From Magallana gigas (taxonomy: Eukaryota): a stretch of DNA of 64,000 bases. Under the pieces are notes generated by a model. It was not told the DNA's origin and made no database searches. It saw only the letters and a program-made list of their open reading frames with translations. How positions within the stretch are numbered: the first letter of the stretch is position 1; each line of letters starts with the position of its first letter. The stretch spans positions 6,572,001-6,636,000 of the forward strand of contig NC_088858.1 in the NCBI RefSeq assembly GCF_963853765.1, read 5' to 3'. A program made the position numbers and the translations under genes. Below, in pieces: positions 54,260 to 63,883 of this stretch.

Positions 54260-57200
54260 CTACATAAATATAGAGGTCTTTGAACTTTTGTCTTTGTAAC
54301 CTTTTACAAAAACCGGGGCTTGAAACCAAACATACGAGGACAGAATGTCCTCTATCACGTGTTCATTCACGTGTGTACACATTGACGGTCCCGTTAAGTC
54401 GGCGGTAATGTCCTCCTCGCCTCTCGCGCCACTTTGATTGCCGACGTCACTGGAAGGAGAGTTCGGTTTGCTTTTCTCGTCAATCACTGTCACGTCACTG
54501 GAGGATAGTCTAGAAGAACTGGACAGGGTGGAAATTGCACTCGCTGATTGGGATATCTCAAACGATTCTAATAAGCTTCTCGTTGAATTCTGCTCTGATT
54601 CTTCGTCCCCGGACAACGAGAGACGTGTAGAAAATTCGTCAATAGCCGACGATTCAAGCGGTTCGATTCCCGATATCTCCGCTCTTCCATCAGAACAAAC
54701 AATGCTGTGGTCAGCGGGTTGTGGCTGCTTGCAGCTCAGATTGAACACGTGACGCCGACCGCGTACCGGGAGCTTAAAGGTAGGTTTAGGGAGGAACCAG
54801 GCGATGCCGCTGTTTTTAGGCGCATTCACCATCACAATCATGTTTGTAGGCGACATCGACTTAGCGCCGCCCAATACATCCTGGGTTATGATTTGTCGAA
54901 AGAGAGTTTTCACAGAGTTTTTGACACTGAGACTATCAAATTCAGGATGAAGAGCTGGCATAGTGAGCAAATACGATTCCTTGGGACTAATCGGAGTAGT
55001 TCCGAACAGTATCAAAATACTGCGGATCTCTGGGCAGATATCAAACGCTTGTGAGATCATGTCAAATATTTGGTCGAGATTGCCAACAGCTTTAATGGCG
55101 TACTTAAGTTCCCTTCTGCTGTTCCGTTTGTCTGGTCGTGCCTTAACACCATTCTGTTGCTGCAAAGAGAGAGAAAAAAACCCATTTTTCATTTAATATA
55201 ATTGCATCTTTGTTTCTACAATAACTCTACAAGATCATATTACAAGACAAACAAAAACTACGGAATATTCGCATCTCATAGGATTTCATGTTTGATTAAT
55301 TCTTATCTATTGAAGTGCATTCTTCTCTCATCAATTAGATTACAAATTACGACCAGCCTTCAGACTTCACGGTGACGTGTCCTGTAACGGAAGAAGTCTT
55401 CCAATCCTATGGTCCAGCTTTGCCGTTACTACGTAACTCCGAATATGTATTTCAACATACACGTGTTGAAAAAAGATACCCACGCTTGGACCTATCCAAA
55501 CATTGAGGAAATAGCAGTTAATTGTTTCCGGGTATTATCCAAGGTCTAGTTATTTCCTTTTAAGAAGCTTTCAAAATACATGTATACAATACCTTGTATG
55601 CCATCGCAAATTAATTATGACGTGTATCGCATTTCTCGTATTATTTCCTTAAAATGATTATTAAAACCCCACACATCATTATAGTGGTATTTCTTTCCGG
55701 AAATCTTGAGCATTTTTTTTTATTTTGAAATTTCAAGCAAATCAAGACAGATAAATATAGAACATTATTGATTAAGTAATGAGAATGGGATCCCAAAAAC
55801 AATGTTTAAAACCACTTATTCCTCGTTTTAAACCAATGTTTTCTTTAATGTCAAAGATTAATTTAAAAAAAAAACAAACCCGTTTTTTTTTAAATATATG
55901 TGACATAATTCTGTAGGGTACGTCGTCTTACAAACTTGAACACTGTGACGATGTCAAAACACATCAATTTACCGGTACGTGTTTGTGTTAGTGCCGAAGT
56001 GAATTGTGCCTCTTTGGTAACATTTCAGTATTTTAAGTGGGGGTGGGGGTTGCAGTTACTTTACCTTTATTTGGGGTTCATGACCAATGGGTAGGAGTGG
56101 TCTTCAAGCCAGGTCAAGGTGCTAATTTTCACTGTGACACGGATGTTTGTGACCTCACTTAATTTTTGACAGTCACCAGCATTCAAATGCCTGATGCTTG
56201 TCATCAAACATTTGTAAGCAACTTTACCATCTTTTGTCAAATTGAGAGAACCTTGAACATGGGATCCTTTTGCTTTTGCATACCTGAACCTGGTAGTAAT
56301 CCATATGGTGCGTATACAACTAAATGCACCATGTTCATTCACATTTGGATGTATTGACATAGAAGTTCCAATTTGTATAGCATATGAATTCATAAGTGGA
56401 TTTTTTATTGATAGCAACATGTTCAAAATATGTGCATTTTGTTAAACATTAGCTATAACTGATGATATAAAATAATTTGAGTTTTAATATAAGCATATCA
56501 TTACAAATATAATTTTTCAAGTGTTGTAAATTTTAACCCTTTACAGGATCAAGAATTTTAGATCATACATAATATTTACTCATAATTATTATCAATCATT
56601 ATTGTATTAAAGTAAGTGGATGAACCAAAACTCCATGACTTGTGGATGTCTCTGGATATGTAGAATACTTGGCTTCTGTCTCATACTATAAATGATCCAT
56701 CTTTAAACTGGGCTCAAATGTAATTGCTTATAACTCAAGAAAGTTTTTATGTATTAAAGGAATGAATTCAATATTTATTTGTTTTATACGGTATAAAATG
56801 GTTTGGGGCAGTTTACGCTTTTTTATAAACCATTTTATATTGTATAAAACAAATAGATATTGAATTCATTGCTTATAATTTAATTTTTTTACTCTTCATT
56901 GTAGGTATAAACGGTCATTTGACCTTTAAAATGACGTAAAATTGTACCAAATTCTATCGTAACGTCAGGCGTATTGATACGTTTTTGACGTTAGTCTTTC
57001 TATGACGTAGGCAACATTCTTTATTTGATATACGATATAAAATAATTTTTAAGCCAATCAGAAAGCGCGTTACAACCAGAATTAAATTATTTTATTTTTA
57101 AGGCATAAGACCAGGGATGTATATACGTCCCTGATATGACACATCCATATTTTGACATTGATACATGTACTTTTACTTTACATGTACTTTTATTTGACCT

Positions 57201-58095
57201 CAATATTGTTTTAAATATTAAGCAATCCAAAGGGAATGTTATTGTAACCTATTTTTTTCTTCTATAAGTGTATCGTCATTTCCATCGACATCTTGAACCA
57301 ATCTGAAGTTCAACTGAACCAGAAGTACATGTATTTGTGATGTTCAGCAAAGGTCAATCATGGGTTGAAACCATAGATCAAGATCAATACATTGTTCATA
57401 ACTACTTAAATGTTAAAGTGGAAAACAGTTACCTGATTGCAAGACAAATGAATGTGTTTATTTCATATATAGCAAAAAACCATTATACTGGATGAACATT
57501 TAGAGCCTTGGTTCAGTGTTCTGAATATTATTTACTTAACTGGCATGTGGTGAAAAAAAAGTACTGTATGAACATGATGTACATATTTCTCCAATGTACT
57601 GATGTTCGTACACATTGGTACATGGGTATATGACTCTTCATTCTACAGAAGTACCATAAAATATGTTTAGTTCTGGTGAAATGGTATGATTGATTCTTAC
57701 TCAGAAATGCCCTTATTTGACAGGCACTACTGTATATCTTTTGTATCATACTAAGTCCGAAATATCAGACGTTTTCCAGGCCTTTTCAAAAAATTCCTTT
57801 GTCAAGTAAAAATATAAAAATAGCTCAAAACTCAGAAAAATGTCATATAACTCAGACTATGCTACAAATGAATAAATCAACAGATAAATTATCAGTACAT
57901 TACCGTTTCTGTATCTGTGGTTACGGAGATGTGTCTCTTAAGCTGATCTAAGACCATAGGAAGTTGTTGTCGCTGATACAGTAAATACTTAATGATTTCA
58001 ACGACCAATTTTGCTCGTACTTTTGATTCTAGACCCTCATCAAACTCAAAATCATAAGTTGTCAAATTATTTTTGAAACTCCCTCTGTTTGCCAT
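54260..58095 (-). CDS. MAD2L1BP: MAD2L1-binding protein / p31comet (HORMA-fold spindle-checkpoint silencer), 363 aa
   Basis: Exons 58095-57904 and 55159-54260 join in phase 0. The p31comet motifs are EIIKYLLYQRQQLP, ILILFGTTPISPKESY, WFLPKPTFKLPVRG and YVWFQAPVFVKGYKD. Confidence 0.88.
56757..57095. mobile_element. Interspersed repeat with a 44-bp-arm terminal hairpin, in the MAD2L1BP intron
   Basis: 56761-56804 and 56827-56870 are reverse complements with 3 mismatches. They are followed by a CpG-containing body ending '...gaaagcgcgttacaaccagaattaaattatttt'. Confidence 0.65.
57112..57133. mobile_element. TIR-only micro-element, 22-bp near-palindrome with 7-bp TSD
   Basis: CAGGGATGTATATACGTCCCTG differs by one base from 11647-11668. 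The flanks are ATAAGAC and ATATGAC (6/7 identical). Confidence 0.6.
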
Positions 58096-59767
58096 GATTT
58101 AAAATACAGTCCTAACCCGAAATTAATACGGATTTGTATGCCGATCCCGATCCATGCGAAATCCACATACACATCAAAGTACTGAAAGTACTATGCTAAG
58201 GGCACATTTATGTGCATCGCCAGAGACCTATTTATGTCTCTGGTATCGCACGCATATTTTTGGAGAATACTAGTATTTAGACCATTGACTAGCCTAAGAC
58301 GTAAATATGAACACATTATACAATAGTGTATCTGTTCTGAGCAACTGCTATGATCCTTGCGTGAGTCTCCAAATATCAAACATCAAGTTGGAATCGATCC
58401 ACTGAGCACAAGGAAGGTGATGTGAAACACAACCCCCACTTAATTGAAAAAGAATCAATAATTTTGGATGCACTCTGATACGTGTATCCTCACTAAATAA
58501 TACCTCTTTTTATAGAAAATCAAATGGTCAATTTGCTCCTTGTTGTTTAATTGACATTATAACGGCTGCCTTTAATAACATTTTAATAAGATTGAAATGT
58601 ATCAAAATCAACGGATTTTTTTTCCATGAAAAGAGGCTCACCAGAGTACATGGATCACGTCAATTATTTCAATCTTTTGATACATTAGAAATTGATATTT
58701 GAGGCTGCACGTACATGAAAATATGTAAAGTATATAGGCATTGTATTTTGGACCTGTATGTTTGCGATAAAGAGATAATAGAAATTACCATTTTTTTGTT
58801 TTCCTTGCTTCTAAGACTATAATGTAATGATTTTGATTATATGTTACAAAGTTATGAACCATATTGTGTGCCAATAAGAAAAACTTTATTTTGCAATCGT
58901 TGTTAACTTTACCATGTTCATCCATATAATAAGATATATTCAAATGAGTCATCCGTAAAATTACTGTAAATAAGGCTAAACAAAAAACATCCTTTTCCAT
59001 CAAAAAGTCAGTTGAAATCAACTTTTCAATAACTAGTTACTGGTGAAATTTCCCGATTTGCAGCGGCATTTAAATAACGGCAGATTTAAACCAAGATTCA
59101 CGTGTTTTAGGTGAATATTGGCCTAATCTGCGTCACCTACAAGGAAACAAACGACAACTGATGTGCAAACAAACTCTCTACAACATACATAGAGGCATCT
59201 ATAGCCAGCCATTTACTGTAACAATTTTTAGAATTTATAGAATAAGCGTAAAAAATCTGAAAAAAATCTTCGCCGAATACATAATATGTACAACACACTT
59301 GCATTCGACCAGTTAAAGCGATTACATTTATAAAATGTCGGTCTTAATTGATTGACCTAAGTTTTTATTGCACCAAGCTACATTGTACCCAAACATATCT
59401 TACAGTATATAGACCAATATATCATCTTAAATGTCCCTATACACAGTATTGTAACGGTGTTTGTGTGTACAAAATGACGTCACTGTTACGTTAATGACGT
59501 ACAAAAACGTTTGCCAAAACTTGCCTGTTGGATTTTCGATTTTTATCCCTGCACTTCAGTGACCAAAGTCTTCAATCAGGGGTAAATAGGTGTTAATTGA
59601 ATGGTCTTGGTTTAAATCGGATTAGCTTGACATAAAGTGTACTAACTGTTGGGTGGATAAAATCGGTTTATTTCATATTAAAGCAAGGGGGCTGTTTTGT
59701 TCTCTAAAGCTCTTTTACTAAAATGTCGTGGGGAATTAAAACAACTTGACATGGATATCACTTGGAG
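58096..59767. promoter_or_regulatory. Divergent promoter region MAD2L1BP / orphan gene A, with a probable 5' UTR exon of gene A
   Basis: A perfect CRE TGACGTCA lies at 59475-59482. A donor GAG|GTATGT at 59768 could splice to the acceptor tgtttttcag immediately before ATG 60271. Confidence 0.4.
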
Positions 59768-60270
59768 GTATGTTTTCATCTTCTAACTTTTCTAGTTGTA
59801 TTTTTCAGTTTCAAGAACAAGATAACAATTCAAAATTTGTCGAAGCAAGGGAGTAAGGATTGTTAAAATTTTATCTTCGACTATTGGTATATGCTACAAA
59901 AAACTTGTTTCTTTGATTGTGAAAGTTTTTATTTATTTTGTCCATTGTTGTCTATGAGTGATTTTTTCTCTTGGAGTCCTAATTAATTTTAATCCGATAT
60001 TATGTGTACAGGCCCTGGAGTCAGATGGAAAGTAAAAGATATACTGGACATTCAGTTTAAGCTCTTAATTAAGTTTTAATTCCAATTAAATTAGACGGAT
60101 ATTCAAAATTAATCCTTTTAACTATTACGCTTCTTTAAATCAGATGCCCTTTAGTTATAACTGTTGCTATTGAGACTTTATGTTTGATTTCCCCGACGAA
60201 CTATTTTCTTTCCTGACATCTTTTTGCGAAGCATCGAAATTGATTTCACGAGCAAATGAATGTTTTTCAG

Positions 60271-61437
60271 ATGCCTTTCCGGAAGCAGCTAAAGTCCAGT
60301 CAACCTCAAGCGTTTGGGAAAAACGCGCTACTACAGAAGCAGTATGAGCGACTGTACAACAGGTTAGAGAGGGAACGGAAGTCCACACAGAGAAGAATAC
60401 AAGTGACAGAGGAGAAGTGTGTTCATTCTATTTACAGTTTACTTCAAGAGGCAGAGACATATGAGCAGGATAAAAGGCGTAAACAGGAAGAGGAGGAAGA
60501 AAAACGGATCAAGAAAGAAGGAAAGACTCCTGTCTTCTTTTACGAAATTGAGAACGAATATGAACCGAAACAACCGGAAACCAAAACAGTCCGTGGTCGA
60601 CCAATGACGGCCTCCGTAAGTACCCGGATAAAAAGTGCAGATCGCAGAGATTTGTCCACGCGCCCCTCCTCGGCGGGACCGGCGCTGTCCGTTGACCGAA
60701 GGGGATCGGTGTCCACAGCGAGTGTCGTTATAAGGGGGTCAAGTGCTGATAGATCTAACAGAAGGTCATCAAATGCAAGCTCGTGTGATTCTATTAAAAA
60801 GGACAGCAGTTTAAATTCAAGACCGTGTTCTGCTAAAACAGACGTAAATCAAGGAAATAACTTTAAGCTTTGGCAACTCAGTCCTCAGAGGGACAATGAA
60901 AGGAAACTATCAATCAAGAACAGAGAAAGTTCTGCGAAGTCTGTGGAAGAAAATCAAGATCCAGTTGTATTGAATTCTTTTGCACGACCGAAAACAGCCG
61001 ATAGGTTCCGACGTCGAACACCTGACGACGAGCTCTCGGAGTATTGGAACCGTAGAGTAGCGAGGATAATCCGAAAGTGGGATCTTAAAGACAATGAACA
61101 GTACACCAAAGACATAAGAGTCATCAGAGACATTGGGCCTCCTCCCTACAAAAGACTAGACTCAAAAACAGGGGAGGCAGAGTTAAAAACAAAAAGTTTC
61201 ATTCAAAAATATTCCGGACAGTATCGCTCACTGTTGAGACCAGAAACAGCTCCAATTTTAGAGACTAGAGCAAAGAGGAACGAAAAGATAAGTAGACAAG
61301 AGATGGCTAGTATCAATGCTGACACGGCCAAATACAAGAAGAACACCAGAATGCTTCTATTGAAAAGTAGGGAAATCAAAATGTATGTAGAAAATCTGCC
61401 CGGCGTAGACAAGACACAAATCATTTTGGATACATAA
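60271..61437 (+). CDS. Uncharacterised protein A (N-terminal coiled coil, disordered Ser/Arg-rich middle with 5 RPx[S/T]A motifs, C-terminal helix), about 388 aa
   Basis: A 1.18-kb open frame in AT-rich DNA. The ATG at 60271 follows an acceptor-like tgtttttcag; the alternative ATG at 60256 has an in-frame stop just upstream, at 60241. It shares two motifs with the neighbouring gene. AATAAA lies at 61612-61617. Confidence 0.8.
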   Translation: MPFRKQLKSSQPQAFGKNALLQKQYERLYNRLERERKSTQRRIQVTEEKCVHSIYSLLQEAETYEQDKRRKQEEEEEKRIKKEGKTPVFFYEIENEYEPKQPETKTVRGRPMTASVSTRIKSADRRDLSTRPSSAGPALSVDRRGSVSTASVVIRGSSADRSNRRSSNASSCDSIKKDSSLNSRPCSAKTDVNQGNNFKLWQLSPQRDNERKLSIKNRESSAKSVEENQDPVVLNSFARPKTADRFRRRTPDDELSEYWNRRVARIIRKWDLKDNEQYTKDIRVIRDIGPPPYKRLDSKTGEAELKTKSFIQKYSGQYRSLLRPETAPILETRAKRNEKISRQEMASINADTAKYKKNTRMLLLKSREIKMYVENLPGVDKTQIILDT

Positions 61438-61650
61438 TCCATTTTGTAATATTTTTTTATTTCAGGTATCAATTAATTTAACTCATAAATGACACTAAAT
61501 ATTGATAATTCATTATTTGCAACACATAAATATCAACATACTATAAGTTATGTACAAGCATATTGAATTGACCAAAACATATTCTGTATTTAAAGAAGAT
61601 ACTGACAATGAAATAAAACATAATACATATTCAATGTTCGATGTTTTTAT

Positions 61651-62964
61651 TTACACTGGAGGACGGCCAGTAGTCACGTGACTCATCTCTGCTCTTATAA
61701 CGGTGCTTCTGCGCAGCAATCTCTTAATGGAAGTTTCCTTCCGGCGCAAGTCCGCGTGAATTGCAGCAAGCTCCGATTTGCGGATCTTGACTTTTTCTCG
61801 CTCCATTTGTTTTGTCAGATGACGTTTGTTCGGGTGAGTGTTGGCAATTCCGGGGATGAATACCCATCTGTACTTGGAAACAGTATTTTGAAGAAAGTCC
61901 CGGGTGCGTAGTGATGCCATATTTGGTGCCATTTGCATGCTTGATTGGGGACGAGGACTTAATTGTCTTTCTTTACCTTCTTTTAATGTTGACGCGGAGA
62001 AGATTTCGTTTATTCGTTTCTGGAAATATTCCGCCTCTTCTTCAGCTGCAGACTTTCCTTTAGCCTCGTTTGTCTGTCCCTCAAGCCATCTATTTGTGAT
62101 GTACCTGTCTTTATCAGATCTATTACCACCAGCTGGGCCCTCTTTGCTTTGATCTTTGAAATTTCGCGCACTTCCAGAAATTTTGATTCGTTTTCCTTCA
62201 GGAACTGTTTTTTGAGCATCTGATCGCGAGGGTAAATCTCCAAGTGCAAATGTCACACTCCGTGTCAGGGCTATCGGTTTTCTCATATTACTGTTGGGAT
62301 TTACAGACATTTTTACTCTTTCGGTTTCTTGGTGTCCGCCCTTTCGGAAACTAATCGTTGGAATCTGTGTTGGATGAAGCGACATATCTTTTATGGAATT
62401 CTTGGATGCTTTTTCGTTTTCTATGGTTTCCGCAGCTTTAAGCAGAGAGAAGTGGTCAATCATACTGTTAACAGTCGTAACTTTAATCTGACTATTGGCG
62501 AAATCCAAGTCCTTTTGATATGATCGACATTTTTTTCGGTAGACACTATCTGCCATTTGATTGCGTTTTCTTGTTAGGTCCTCTGTCAGTCGACTAATTG
62601 GTCGCTGTGTTACTTGATCTGATGACGTAGGGATCCTAAATTTAATTATAAAAACACGATAATAATCAAAATCAATAACACAACATTATCAATTTACAAT
62701 ATGGTGTGATTAATTATTTTCCATAAAAAATATACATAGATATATGATAAAATATACTAATATCGATTAATATAATTATGTTTGAAGATTTTGAAATTTT
62801 TACATGAAAATAATTTAAAGAAATATATCGGAACGTTACCTGTTGACTGGTTTGTTGACGGCTTTCTCCGCCCTATCCATACAGCTGTTACAAATACACC
62901 ACTGTTCACTGCTGGCCAGGTCTTCAGCCACCGCCCCCTCACTCGTACAGTTATGGGCGTCCAT
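61651..62964 (-). CDS. Uncharacterised basic protein B, paralogue of protein A, about 369 aa
   Basis: The ORF track's 301-aa frame extends upstream without stops to an acceptor (exon 62635-61651). It joins in phase 2 to exon 62964-62840 (MDAHNCTSEG...KPVNR|IPTSSDQ...RNQMADSV), whose donor is CAG|gtaacg. A minus-strand AATAAA lies at 61456-61461. Confidence 0.78.
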
Positions 62965-63883
62965 GTCCAGACCCGGATTTTTTCCTATAACAACTTCTCT
63001 CTGTATGGCAAAGTCATGTACGTCCAAATTCCCGAACAATTACTTCTGAACAGACCAATAAGTTATAGAAGAATAATTTAAAAAATGCGCTATCATTTCT
63101 TTGAATGTGTCACACCATTCAATACACAGAACAAGCATTGAAGCCTCACAATGCCGTTTGTTCCATTTCGGTCGGTTTGTCATTCGATATCTAGATTTTT
63201 GAAAGTTTAATAGAGTAAGAAAGTTAAAACGGGAGGGGCGCCAAAAATGGTTAAAGAGAAACAAAGAACGTTGCAGTGCAGTGGACACATTGTCACTGAA
63301 TAACAACACAGGTGTGTGCAGTACAGTAGACTTCAAAGTGACGGCGGTTGTCCGTAGCTAAGTCAGTGGTGTTGGATAAGGGTGCTCTAAAGTTAGAACA
63401 ATTGAATTTAAAAAATAACATTCTCAAGATTAAAATCTACAATTAAATATTTTTTTGAAAAAGACACTTTTCCGGATAACTGATCTAATGAAAAAAAACC
63501 ACCACCATAAATCATTCGTATTATATAAACAGGAGATGACTTTTTACACGTGAACATTTTTTTTTCTCGTAACTCGTCTGAGTAAATTTCTCACGATTGT
63601 AACTTTTAAATAGAAAGGTCGTTTTTATGATACTGTTTTGAGAATAAAACGCATAAACGAATAGATCCCCATGAAATAAGATTTCAGAAAGAAGAGGGTG
63701 TGGGGATAAGATAGCGCAAATGCCCATTCGGTTACGTCACGAAATACAATTTTGAATTTATTTTTTCCCAATTAAATCCATTTAAATATATTATAACACA
63801 AGTTTGCAAAAGCATAATTTCTAACTTTATTCAGTTTTAAAAATATTTAACAAACGATAAAAAAAAATATTGCATTAGATTTT

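What the first reader, a model, noticed from the sequence alone, without database searches (positions are those of the whole stretch)
60271..62964. Two tail-to-tail orphan genes are hidden paralogues sharing gapless N- and C-terminal motifs
Seen in sequence by manual alignment. N-motif: A IQVTEEKCVHSIYSLLQEAETYEQDK (60397-60474) vs B IKVTTVNSMIDHFSLLKAAETIENEK (62487-62410), 11/26 identical with no gaps. An upstream Asn and Tyr also fall in register, 25 and 18 residues before the Ile. C-motif: A KISRQEMASINADTAKYKKNTRMLLLKSREIK vs B KIRKSELAAIHADLRRKETSIKRLLRRSTVIR, 11/32 identical with no gaps, and each lies 13-18 residues from the C-terminus. The sequence between the motifs is unalignable and low-complexity. 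Inference: an ancient inverted duplication produced a two-member family with two conserved helical modules joined by a disordered linker. They may work as a heterodimer. I cannot assign either module to a named domain.
Basis: partly seen in the sequence, partly recalled or inferred. Interest (0 to 1): 0.72.

Follow-up and report, generated by a model that had tools for sequence, protein, structure and literature searches.

The report
Ancient duplicate gene pair in oysters

Summary
Gene A (60271-61437, +, 388 aa) and gene B (62964-62840 plus 62635-61651, -, 369 aa) contain the quoted motifs at the quoted coordinates. The similarity is far beyond chance by BLASTP, shuffles, HMM against shuffles and hhalign.

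- The similarity is not limited to two motifs. Four collinear helical blocks are shared, and AlphaFold gives both proteins the same helix layout around a disordered linker.
- The genes are not strict orphans. The family has no Pfam match but occurs in Saccostrea, Pinctada and three scallop genera.
- The duplication was probably not inverted. In Pinctada, Pecten, Argopecten and an unnamed assembly the A-type and B-type genes sit next to each other on the same strand. Trees separate A-type from B-type and reject an oyster-only duplication (AU p about 1.5e-5). The tail-to-tail layout is therefore most simply a later inversion of B in true oysters.

Both genes are transcribed and spliced, and both are under purifying selection (dN/dS 0.10 and 0.21). 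A-type proteins keep 3-5 RPx[S/T]A motifs that oyster B has lost. The heterodimer idea remains untested because the complex prediction gave no verdict.

The parts
59552..59767 (+). Gene A non-coding 5' exon (a minimum extent). It contains two short upstream ORFs, with ATGs at 59723 and 59751.
   Evidence: RNA contigs X1 and X3 carry 214 and 175 letters before 60269 whose end matches 59736-59765 exactly. The exon is followed by AG|GTATGT.
59768..60270 (+). Gene A 5'UTR intron (GT..AG). The acceptor sits immediately before the start codon.
   Evidence: The ATG at 60256 listed by the ORF listing is therefore intronic, and orthologues start at MPFRKQ.
60271..61437 (+). Gene A coding sequence: 388 aa plus stop, in a single coding exon.
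   Evidence: ORF. Orthologues are 65-99% identical. dN/dS is 0.096 between the two Saccostrea species. RNA contigs cover it.
60397..60474 (+). N-motif of A, within the long N-terminal helix (residues 14-82).
61285..61380 (+). C-motif of A, within the C-terminal helix (residues 342-374).
61438..61650 (.). The 213-nt gap between the two stop codons, probably the overlapping antisense 3'UTRs of A and B.
   Evidence: AATAAA lies on the + strand at 61612, and AATAAA on the - strand at 61461-61456. RNA contigs run through the gap, and strand-specific reads of B reach the 61496-61609 bin. The overlap itself is inferred.
61651..62635 (-). Gene B coding exon 2: 327 codons plus one base of the split Arg codon, including the stop.
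   Evidence: ORF, splice junction, orthologues.
61693..61788 (-). C-motif of B.
   Evidence: helix 286-322 of the exon-2 product.
62410..62487 (-). N-motif of B.
   Evidence: helix 13-82 of the exon-2 product.
62636..62839 (-). Gene B intron: 204 nt, GT..AG on the minus strand, phase 2.
   Evidence: The joint 62634/62839 (with cut +1) is seen in RNA contigs X1 and X3 and in 4 raw poly(A) reads of X21. Sequence.
62840..62964 (-). Gene B coding part of exon 1: 41 codons plus 2 nt, with the ATG at 62964. It encodes the conserved SEQWCIC-N-CM...AEK-VN-PV-R segment.
   Evidence: The transcript extends upstream to at least 63022 (X3 contig).

Best explanation
A and B are two expressed protein-coding genes. 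They are the A-type and B-type members of a small family with no Pfam match, found so far only in pteriomorph bivalves (true oysters, pearl oysters, scallops and some unnamed assemblies).

Shown or strongly supported:
- One ancestral gene had a 5'UTR intron just before its ATG and a single large coding exon. It was duplicated head to tail before oysters and scallops diverged.
- In the true-oyster lineage B was flipped in place. The result is the present tail-to-tail pair, with stop codons 213 nt apart here and probably overlapping 3'UTRs.
- On the oyster and pearl-oyster branch B also lost its ancestral Met-Pro start, which is now Ile-Pro. It now begins in the upstream exon, which adds 42 residues carrying a W-C-x-C-x2-C motif.
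- Both proteins are about 42-45 kDa and basic (pI about 10). They share one architecture: a roughly 70-residue N-terminal helix, a 100-150 residue disordered Ser/Arg-rich linker, then three C-terminal helices.

Inferred mechanism, at roughly 25% confidence:
- The helical blocks form an assembly or binding surface of the coiled-coil or helix-bundle scaffold kind.
- The linker carries short docking or phosphorylation motifs. A-type proteins conserve 3-5 RPx[S/T]A sites, which have Arg at position -3, a pattern typical of basophilic kinases.
- Oyster B has lost these sites and evolves about twice as fast as A, which suggests the two copies have divided or changed roles.
For: Paralogy: BLASTP E = 6e-8, hhalign 90% probability, shuffle tests, and the A-only HMM scoring B at 39.5 bits against 10.7 bits or less for 2000 shuffles. 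A joint alignment has 25 invariant collinear columns.

Real genes:
- Spliced RNA contigs cover both genes, and strand-specific poly(A) reads cover B.
- dN/dS is 0.096 for A and 0.21 for B. It is lowest in the helical blocks (0.03-0.09) and highest in the linkers (0.22-0.40).

Family range: Saccostrea (two species), Pecten, Ylistrum, Argopecten and Pinctada. A profile search of this genome finds only these two loci.

Age and orientation:
- A-type and B-type genes are adjacent on the same strand in L008 (Pecten), L010 (Argopecten), L009 (Pinctada) and L006 (unnamed). They are convergent in both Saccostrea species and in this window.
- The A|B split has support 79/92, rising to 97/99 when two long-branch rows are left out. 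Pinctada gene 2 plus oyster B has 99/98. The AU test rejects oyster A plus oyster B as one clade at p = 1.6e-5 and 1.4e-5.
- The p31comet neighbour is shared with S. echinata and Pinctada.

Shared gene structure: an acceptor-like CAG lies 0-22 nt before the ATG in most members examined and was confirmed by RNA for A and B here.

Architecture: AlphaFold gives A helices at 14-82, 251-272, 302-318 and 342-374, and B helices at 13-82, 196-216, 239-259 and 286-322. The linkers have pLDDT below 50.

RPx[S/T]A motifs: 3-5 at homologous positions in every A-type protein, matched by 0 of 2000 shuffles. Oyster and Pinctada B have none.
Against: - The function is not shown by anything here. There was no Pfam, PDB, fold or literature match.
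- The support for a single B-type clade depends on leaving out two long-branch sequences of unknown origin. The B-type group was defined partly from the alignment (the KY[RK]W-F motif) and from synteny.
- The organisms behind L005 and L006 and several Logan proteins are unknown.
- In species other than this one, the 5'UTR intron is read from sequence only.
- The Pinctada upstream exon match is weak (E = 0.89).
- The 3'UTR overlap is inferred from poly(A) signals and from unstranded contigs that bridge the two genes.
- The kinase-site reading of RPx[S/T]A rests on general knowledge of basophilic kinase consensus sequences, not on a test.
Confidence: 0.8

Rival explanations
1. One reading: an ancient inverted duplication created the convergent pair directly, and the two products work as a heterodimer through their two shared helical modules.
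For: The pair is convergent in three oyster genomes. Both proteins share long conserved helices. Both appear in the same RNA assemblies.
Against: Four other lineages have the two genes on the same strand, including Pinctada, whose gene 2 is sister to oyster B. A convergent ancestor would need several independent flips. There are four shared blocks, not two. There is no evidence either way on binding (one search gave no verdict).
Confidence: 0.1
2. The similarity is a by-product of composition (basic, helical, Ser/Arg-rich) and the genes are unrelated.
For: Both proteins have pI about 10 and low-complexity linkers. The overall identity is only about 20%.
Against: Composition-preserving shuffles never approach the observed scores. 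BLASTP uses compositional adjustment. The conserved blocks are collinear, the intron position is shared, and the A-type and B-type genes are adjacent in every genome examined that has both.
Confidence: 0.01
3. Functional rival 1: the family encodes cilium- or sperm-flagellum-associated microtubule-binding proteins. These are basic, largely disordered filament-decorating proteins like the vertebrate ciliary microtubule inner proteins.
For: The nearest named language-model neighbours are testis and cilium proteins: CIMIP4/TEX33 at 0.79 and 0.78, and C10orf120 at 0.76. The proteins are basic with long single helices and short repeated motifs.
Against: Those scores are in the range that shuffled sequences reach a third of the time. 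No TEX33 Pfam hit appeared in any of 17 members. A profile search of all PDB chains, which include doublet-microtubule structures, found nothing. Fold hits to axonemal entries have E above 1. No tissue information could be obtained.
Confidence: 0.2
4. Functional rival 2: nuclear Ser/Arg-rich proteins that act on RNA or chromatin.
For: The linker is Ser/Arg-rich with RRGS and RRSS motifs. KRRK and RRR basic clusters could act as nuclear localisation signals. pI is about 10.
Against: There is no RRM, zinc finger or other nucleic-acid-binding domain. True RS-dipeptide repeats are absent. This is inference from composition only.
Confidence: 0.12

Closest known systems
NCBI 'uncharacterized protein' pairs: LOC134264533 / LOC134264534 (Saccostrea cucullata) and LOC133201299 / LOC133201232 (S. 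echinata)
   Same: They are orthologues of A (71% identity) and B (43-44%). They have the same convergent tail-to-tail layout, 440-490 nt apart, and in S. echinata the same p31comet neighbour.
   Different: Saccostrea B is longer (418-420 aa) because of a roughly 40-residue insert in the linker. None of them has a name or a known function.
Scallop pair LOC117323416 / LOC117323418 (Pecten maximus) and its Argopecten and Ylistrum counterparts
   Same: An A-type and a B-type gene sit next to each other. They share the same four conserved blocks, the first RPLTA motif and an acceptor-like site just upstream of the ATG.
   Different: The two genes are on the same strand, about 3.9 kb apart. Scallop B starts at the ancestral Met-Pro, has no upstream coding exon, and keeps one RPx[S/T]A motif.
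CIMIP4 / TEX33 (Pfam PF15400) and other vertebrate testis-specific disordered proteins (C10orf120 / DUF5520)
   Same: They are basic, largely disordered proteins of similar size, and the nearest named neighbours by protein-language-model features.
   Different: No sequence match by Pfam HMM or by PDB profile search. The scores of 0.76-0.79 are below the level at which such hits are informative. This is a resemblance in kind, not membership.
   Same: They contain long helices with heptad-like hydrophobic spacing. Sub-threshold Pfam hits occur on the helices: Med21 at E = 0.1 and HAUS1 at E = 0.012 at best.
   Different: Every hit is far below its gathering score. No CCDC190-type family was listed at E up to 10 for A or B, or up to 1 for 17 family members.

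Membership tests
Unnamed pteriomorph-bivalve A/B family (defined here) | Four collinear conserved blocks: the N-helix (N..Y.LL.EAE..E.EK), EY[WF]..[RK][VI], F.Q....KY[RK], and the C-helix (K[IV]...EL..I.AD....S..I) | tested here: met
   Both A and B carry all four blocks in order. The profile finds both types. The A-only HMM finds B.
Unnamed pteriomorph-bivalve A/B family (defined here) | Gene structure: an intron ending 0-22 nt before the ancestral start codon, followed by one large coding exon | tested here: met
   RNA-confirmed for A (acceptor at 60269-70) and for B (acceptor at 62637-6). Acceptor-like CAG seen in most of the other members examined, from sequence only.
Unnamed pteriomorph-bivalve A/B family (defined here) | A-type and B-type genes adjacent, downstream of p31comet | tested here: met
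   Adjacent in every genome examined that has both. p31comet was seen in this window, in S. echinata and in Pinctada.
TEX33 / CIMIP4 (PF15400) | Match to the Pfam HMM at or near its gathering score | tested here: not met
   Not listed for A or B at E up to 10, nor for any of 17 members at E up to 1.
   The full Pfam-A scans listed only Med21, PEARLI-4, WxLIP_HBD, HAUS1 and other sub-threshold chance hits.
Heterodimeric coiled-coil pair | Predicted or measured A-B interface | tested here: inconclusive
   Complex prediction scored 0.00 with partner pLDDT 39, and the tool's verdict was 'no answer'.
Doublet-microtubule inner proteins with solved structures | Sequence or fold match to a chain in axonemal cryo-EM entries | tested here: not met
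   The profile search of PDB gave one unrelated hit at E = 1.5. Foldseek hits to 8g2z and 8glv have E of 2.8-3.7 and TM of 0.10 or less.

The most novel reading that the evidence does not exclude
A-type and B-type proteins are obligate partners that assemble through their matching helical blocks into a bivalve-specific scaffold, for example on cilia or sperm microtubules. In true oysters, the inversion that made their 3'UTRs overlap antisense couples or balances their expression post-transcriptionally.
Probability: 0.08. Interest if true: 0.55.

Novelty: new member of a known kind. Interest (0 to 1): 0.3.

Why it matters
The finding links two sets of "uncharacterized LOC" genes in oysters, pearl oysters and scallops into one family with two ancient subtypes. 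It defines the family's conserved blocks and a repeated RPx[S/T]A motif. It corrects both gene models: A starts at 60271 after a 5'UTR intron, and B has two coding exons. It also gives a small, clean example of an in-place gene inversion that produced convergent, probably overlapping transcripts. This is useful for bivalve genome annotation and as a starting point for functional work. Nothing here points to an unusual mechanism.

Tried and rejected
- Complex prediction on full-length A plus the 301-aa part of B scored 0.00 with pLDDT about 40. The tool's verdict was "no answer", so this counts neither for nor against binding.
- Pfam scans of A, B and 17 family members gave only sub-threshold coiled-coil noise.
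- The profile search of all PDB sequences found nothing.
- Foldseek and shape searches found nothing usable: the A model against AFDB clusters and the ESM Atlas, and the B model against PDB. TM scores were 0.3 or less.
- Protein-atlas feature searches gave only weak leads for A (0.76-0.80) and nothing for a B orthologue.
- The third word-based homologue search, run with the wide profile, added only scallop B-type proteins.
- The literature search for the six LOC identifiers returned 0 papers. A general search on oyster sperm proteomes returned nothing that could be linked without gene identifiers.
- The scan's earlier findings near this place were unrelated.
- A single-sequence search of this genome with A did not pick up B. 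The profile search did, and found no third member.
- Tissue of expression could not be determined, because run and sample names are coded and the raw-read run X20 had no reads here.
- The 331-aa neighbour beyond the window end was tested as a possible third member and rejected (hhalign probability 0.1%).
Full report
**What is at the locus.** The window is AT-rich (GC 0.27-0.36 in the flanks), and GC rises to 0.41-0.48 across two long open reading frames. These are 60256..61437 on the + strand (393 aa) and 61651..62556 on the - strand (301 aa from its first ATG, inside a 344-aa open frame). The genome is 564 Mb in 29 contigs, and the closest named relatives are Saccostrea oysters.

**Corrected gene models.** RNA contigs from two runs, and raw poly(A) reads from a third, were laid on 59900-63300.
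- Gene A has a non-coding first exon covering at least 59552-59767. Its end matches 59736-59765 exactly and is followed by AG|GTATGT.
- A's intron runs from 59768 to 60270, and its second exon begins exactly at the ATG at 60271. The ATG at 60256 is therefore intronic. A is 388 aa and starts MPFRKQ, as its orthologues do.
- Gene B has a 204-nt GT..AG intron at 62636-62839. It is seen in both RNA contigs and in four raw reads whose first mate lies on the + strand, as expected for a minus-strand RNA in a typical stranded library.
- B's coding sequence is 62964-62840 plus 62635-61651, giving 369 aa.

**The observation.** The four peptides translate exactly as quoted. The identities (11/26 and 11/32), the distances to the C-termini (18 and 13 residues) and the in-register Asn and Tyr are all correct.
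- BLASTP with compositional adjustment aligns 258 residues at E = 6e-8, with the N-motif as a second HSP at E = 0.011.
- The three best ungapped diagonals score 60, 58 and 53. In 1000 shuffles of B the top score averaged 37.9 (SD 5.0) and reached 60 once. The second-best score never reached 58.
- An HMM built only from 13 A-type proteins scores window B at 39.5 bits, with separate N-terminal (12.8 bits) and C-terminal (31.6 bits) matches. The best of 2000 shuffles reaches 10.7 bits.
- An HMM built only from oyster B proteins scores A at 22.1 bits, against a best shuffle of 9.5 bits.
- hhalign of the two oyster alignments gives 90% probability and E = 1.4e-6.

The paralogy is real.

**More than two modules.** The joint alignment has 25 invariant columns in the same order in both genes. 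The second of these is the highest-scoring diagonal of all. AlphaFold2 with family alignments predicts the same layout for both proteins.
- A has helices at 14-82, 251-272, 302-318 and 342-374.
- B (exon-2 product) has helices at 13-82, 196-216, 239-259 and 286-322.
- pLDDT is about 90 in the terminal helices and below 50 in the linkers.

**Real, constrained genes.** Between the two Saccostrea species, dN/dS is 0.096 for A: 0.026 in the N-helix, 0.22 in the linker and 0.04 in the C-terminal blocks. For B it is 0.21: 0.08, 0.40 and 0.087 in the same three regions. B evolves about twice as fast as A.

**Family and its range.** Word-based searches found only oyster orthologues. An exhaustive HMMER search of 1.84 billion representatives with the joint oyster profile found 16 proteins at E up to 1e-3. 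These include Pecten maximus LOC117323416, a Pinctada imbricata protein and several unnamed ones. A later search added the scallop B-type proteins from Pecten LOC117323418, Ylistrum and Argopecten. All named members are pteriomorph bivalves, from the orders Pterioida and Pectinida plus the oysters. No Pfam family reaches significance in any of 17 members. No PDB chain matches the profile. A profile search of this genome finds only these two loci. The family is therefore taxon-restricted and unnamed, but these are not single-species orphans.

**Origin of the tail-to-tail layout.** The convergent pair is conserved in S. cucullata and S. echinata, with the genes 440-490 nt apart. In every non-oyster locus fetched that has two family genes, the A-type gene is followed by a B-type gene on the same strand.
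- Pecten: L008 10001-11248 and 15170-16417.
- Argopecten: L010 4824-6062 and 10001-11230.
- Pinctada: L009 about 9624-10839 and 16538-17605.
- Unnamed assembly: L006 2073-3119 and 6001-6951.

B-type proteins share KY[RK]W-F. In maximum-likelihood trees the A-type | B-type split has support 79/92. This rises to 97/99 when two long-branch sequences of unknown origin are left out. Pinctada gene 2 is sister to oyster B (99/98). An AU test rejects a tree that unites oyster A with oyster B (p = 1.6e-5 and 1.4e-5). p31comet lies upstream of the pair in this window, in S. echinata and in Pinctada.

The most parsimonious history is a head-to-tail tandem duplication before oysters and scallops diverged, followed by one in-place inversion of B in the true-oyster lineage. 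"Inverted duplication" does not.

**Shared gene structure and B's new start.** Most of the family genes examined have an acceptor-like pyrimidine tract plus CAG 0-22 nt before the ATG. RNA confirms this intron for A and B here. In oyster B the codon aligned with the ancestral Met is Ile (Ile-Pro instead of Met-Pro). The acceptor lies one base upstream of that codon, and the upstream exon supplies 42 coding residues, SEQWCIC-N-CM..AEK-VN-PV-R, which are conserved in Saccostrea. The Pinctada B-type open frame also lacks a suitably placed Met. A GERWCACDKCFE-encoding stretch lies 540 nt upstream on the same strand. The match is weak (E = 0.89), but it suggests the new start predates the inversion. 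Scallop B still starts at Met-Pro.

**A repeated linear motif.** Window A has five RPx[S/T]A motifs, at residues 110, 131, 184, 239 and 323. Every A-type protein keeps 3-5 of them at homologous positions, and 0 of 2000 shuffles matched this. Scallop, L006 and P0028 B-type proteins keep only the first. Oyster and Pinctada B have none. Oyster B instead has an RS[V/A]TF segment whose Arg, Ser, Thr and Phe are invariant; in this window it fits the RVxF pattern. Arg at position -3 of a Ser or Thr is the basophilic-kinase pattern. That reading comes from general knowledge and was not tested.

**How it probably works.** The following are shown:
- two constrained, transcribed paralogues;
- one shared helix-linker-helices architecture;
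- basic charge (pI about 10);
- no signal peptide-like or membrane segment seen in the translated sequences;
- different retention of the linker motifs in the two copies.

The following is inferred, at roughly 25% confidence. The helices form an assembly surface of the coiled-coil or helix-bundle kind, and the linker carries regulated docking or phosphorylation sites. After duplication B shed these sites and gained a Cys-containing N-terminal extension, so the two copies now differ in role.

Two more specific guesses rest on weak evidence. The first is a cilium or sperm microtubule association, supported only by language-model neighbours at 0.76-0.79. The second is a nuclear Ser/Arg-rich role, supported only by composition. 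The heterodimer proposal could not be evaluated.

**3' ends.** The stop codons are 213 nt apart. The only canonical poly(A) signals are AATAAA at 61612 on the + strand and AATAAA at 61461-61456 on the - strand. RNA contigs run through the gap, and B-strand reads reach the 61496-61609 bin. The two 3'UTRs therefore probably overlap almost completely. This is inferred, and the gap sequence is not conserved with Saccostrea.

**Verdict.** This is an uncharacterised, bivalve-restricted two-member family with a tidy evolutionary history. It is useful for annotation, but nothing indicates a new kind of system.

Noticed in passing
window 61438-61650: The convergent genes have stop codons 213 nt apart. 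The poly(A) signals (AATAAA at 61612 on +, and at 61461-61456 on -) are placed so that each 3'UTR would run to about the other gene's stop codon. RNA contigs bridge the gap. This is a likely natural antisense overlap.
   Followed up: partly
window 59723-59767 and 60271-60290: Gene A's 5' exon carries two short upstream ORFs. One starts at ATG 59723 and has 8 codons. The other starts at ATG 59751, crosses the splice junction and overlaps the main start codon out of frame.
   Followed up: no
window 57916-58108 and 54740-55046 (-): Exons of a p31comet (MAD2L1BP)-like gene lie upstream of gene A. The same neighbour is present in Saccostrea echinata and Pinctada imbricata, so synteny is conserved.
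   Followed up: partly
L014 2559-3554 (-), about 2.5-3.5 kb beyond the window's end: Another single-exon, basic ORF of 331 aa with no Pfam match is conserved in both Saccostrea loci. It is not a member of the A/B family (hhalign probability 0.1%).
   Followed up: partly
L009 9624-10839 (+), Pinctada imbricata GCA_033119305.1: The A-type gene is split over three reading frames in this assembly, and the annotated protein is a 217-aa fragment. This could be assembly frameshifts or a decaying copy. A Logan protein (P0018, 399 aa) looks like the intact version from a related source.
   Followed up: no
L009 15967-16002 (+): A GERWCACDKCFE-encoding stretch lies 540 nt upstream of the Pinctada B-type ORF. 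It resembles oyster B exon 1 (SEQWCIC-N-CM). The match is weak (E = 0.89) but is in the expected place and on the expected strand.
   Followed up: partly
window 62248-62262 (-), B residues 167-171: RSVTF fits the PP1-docking RVxF pattern. Its Arg, Ser, Thr and Phe are invariant across the oyster B orthologues (RS[V/A]TF), although Ala replaces Val in most of them.
   Followed up: no
L008 18602-21248 (-) and L010 13545-21230 (-): In scallops the gene downstream of the pair carries an EMARD_N domain. No counterpart was found within 10 kb downstream in this oyster genome, so downstream synteny differs between oysters and scallops.
   Followed up: partly
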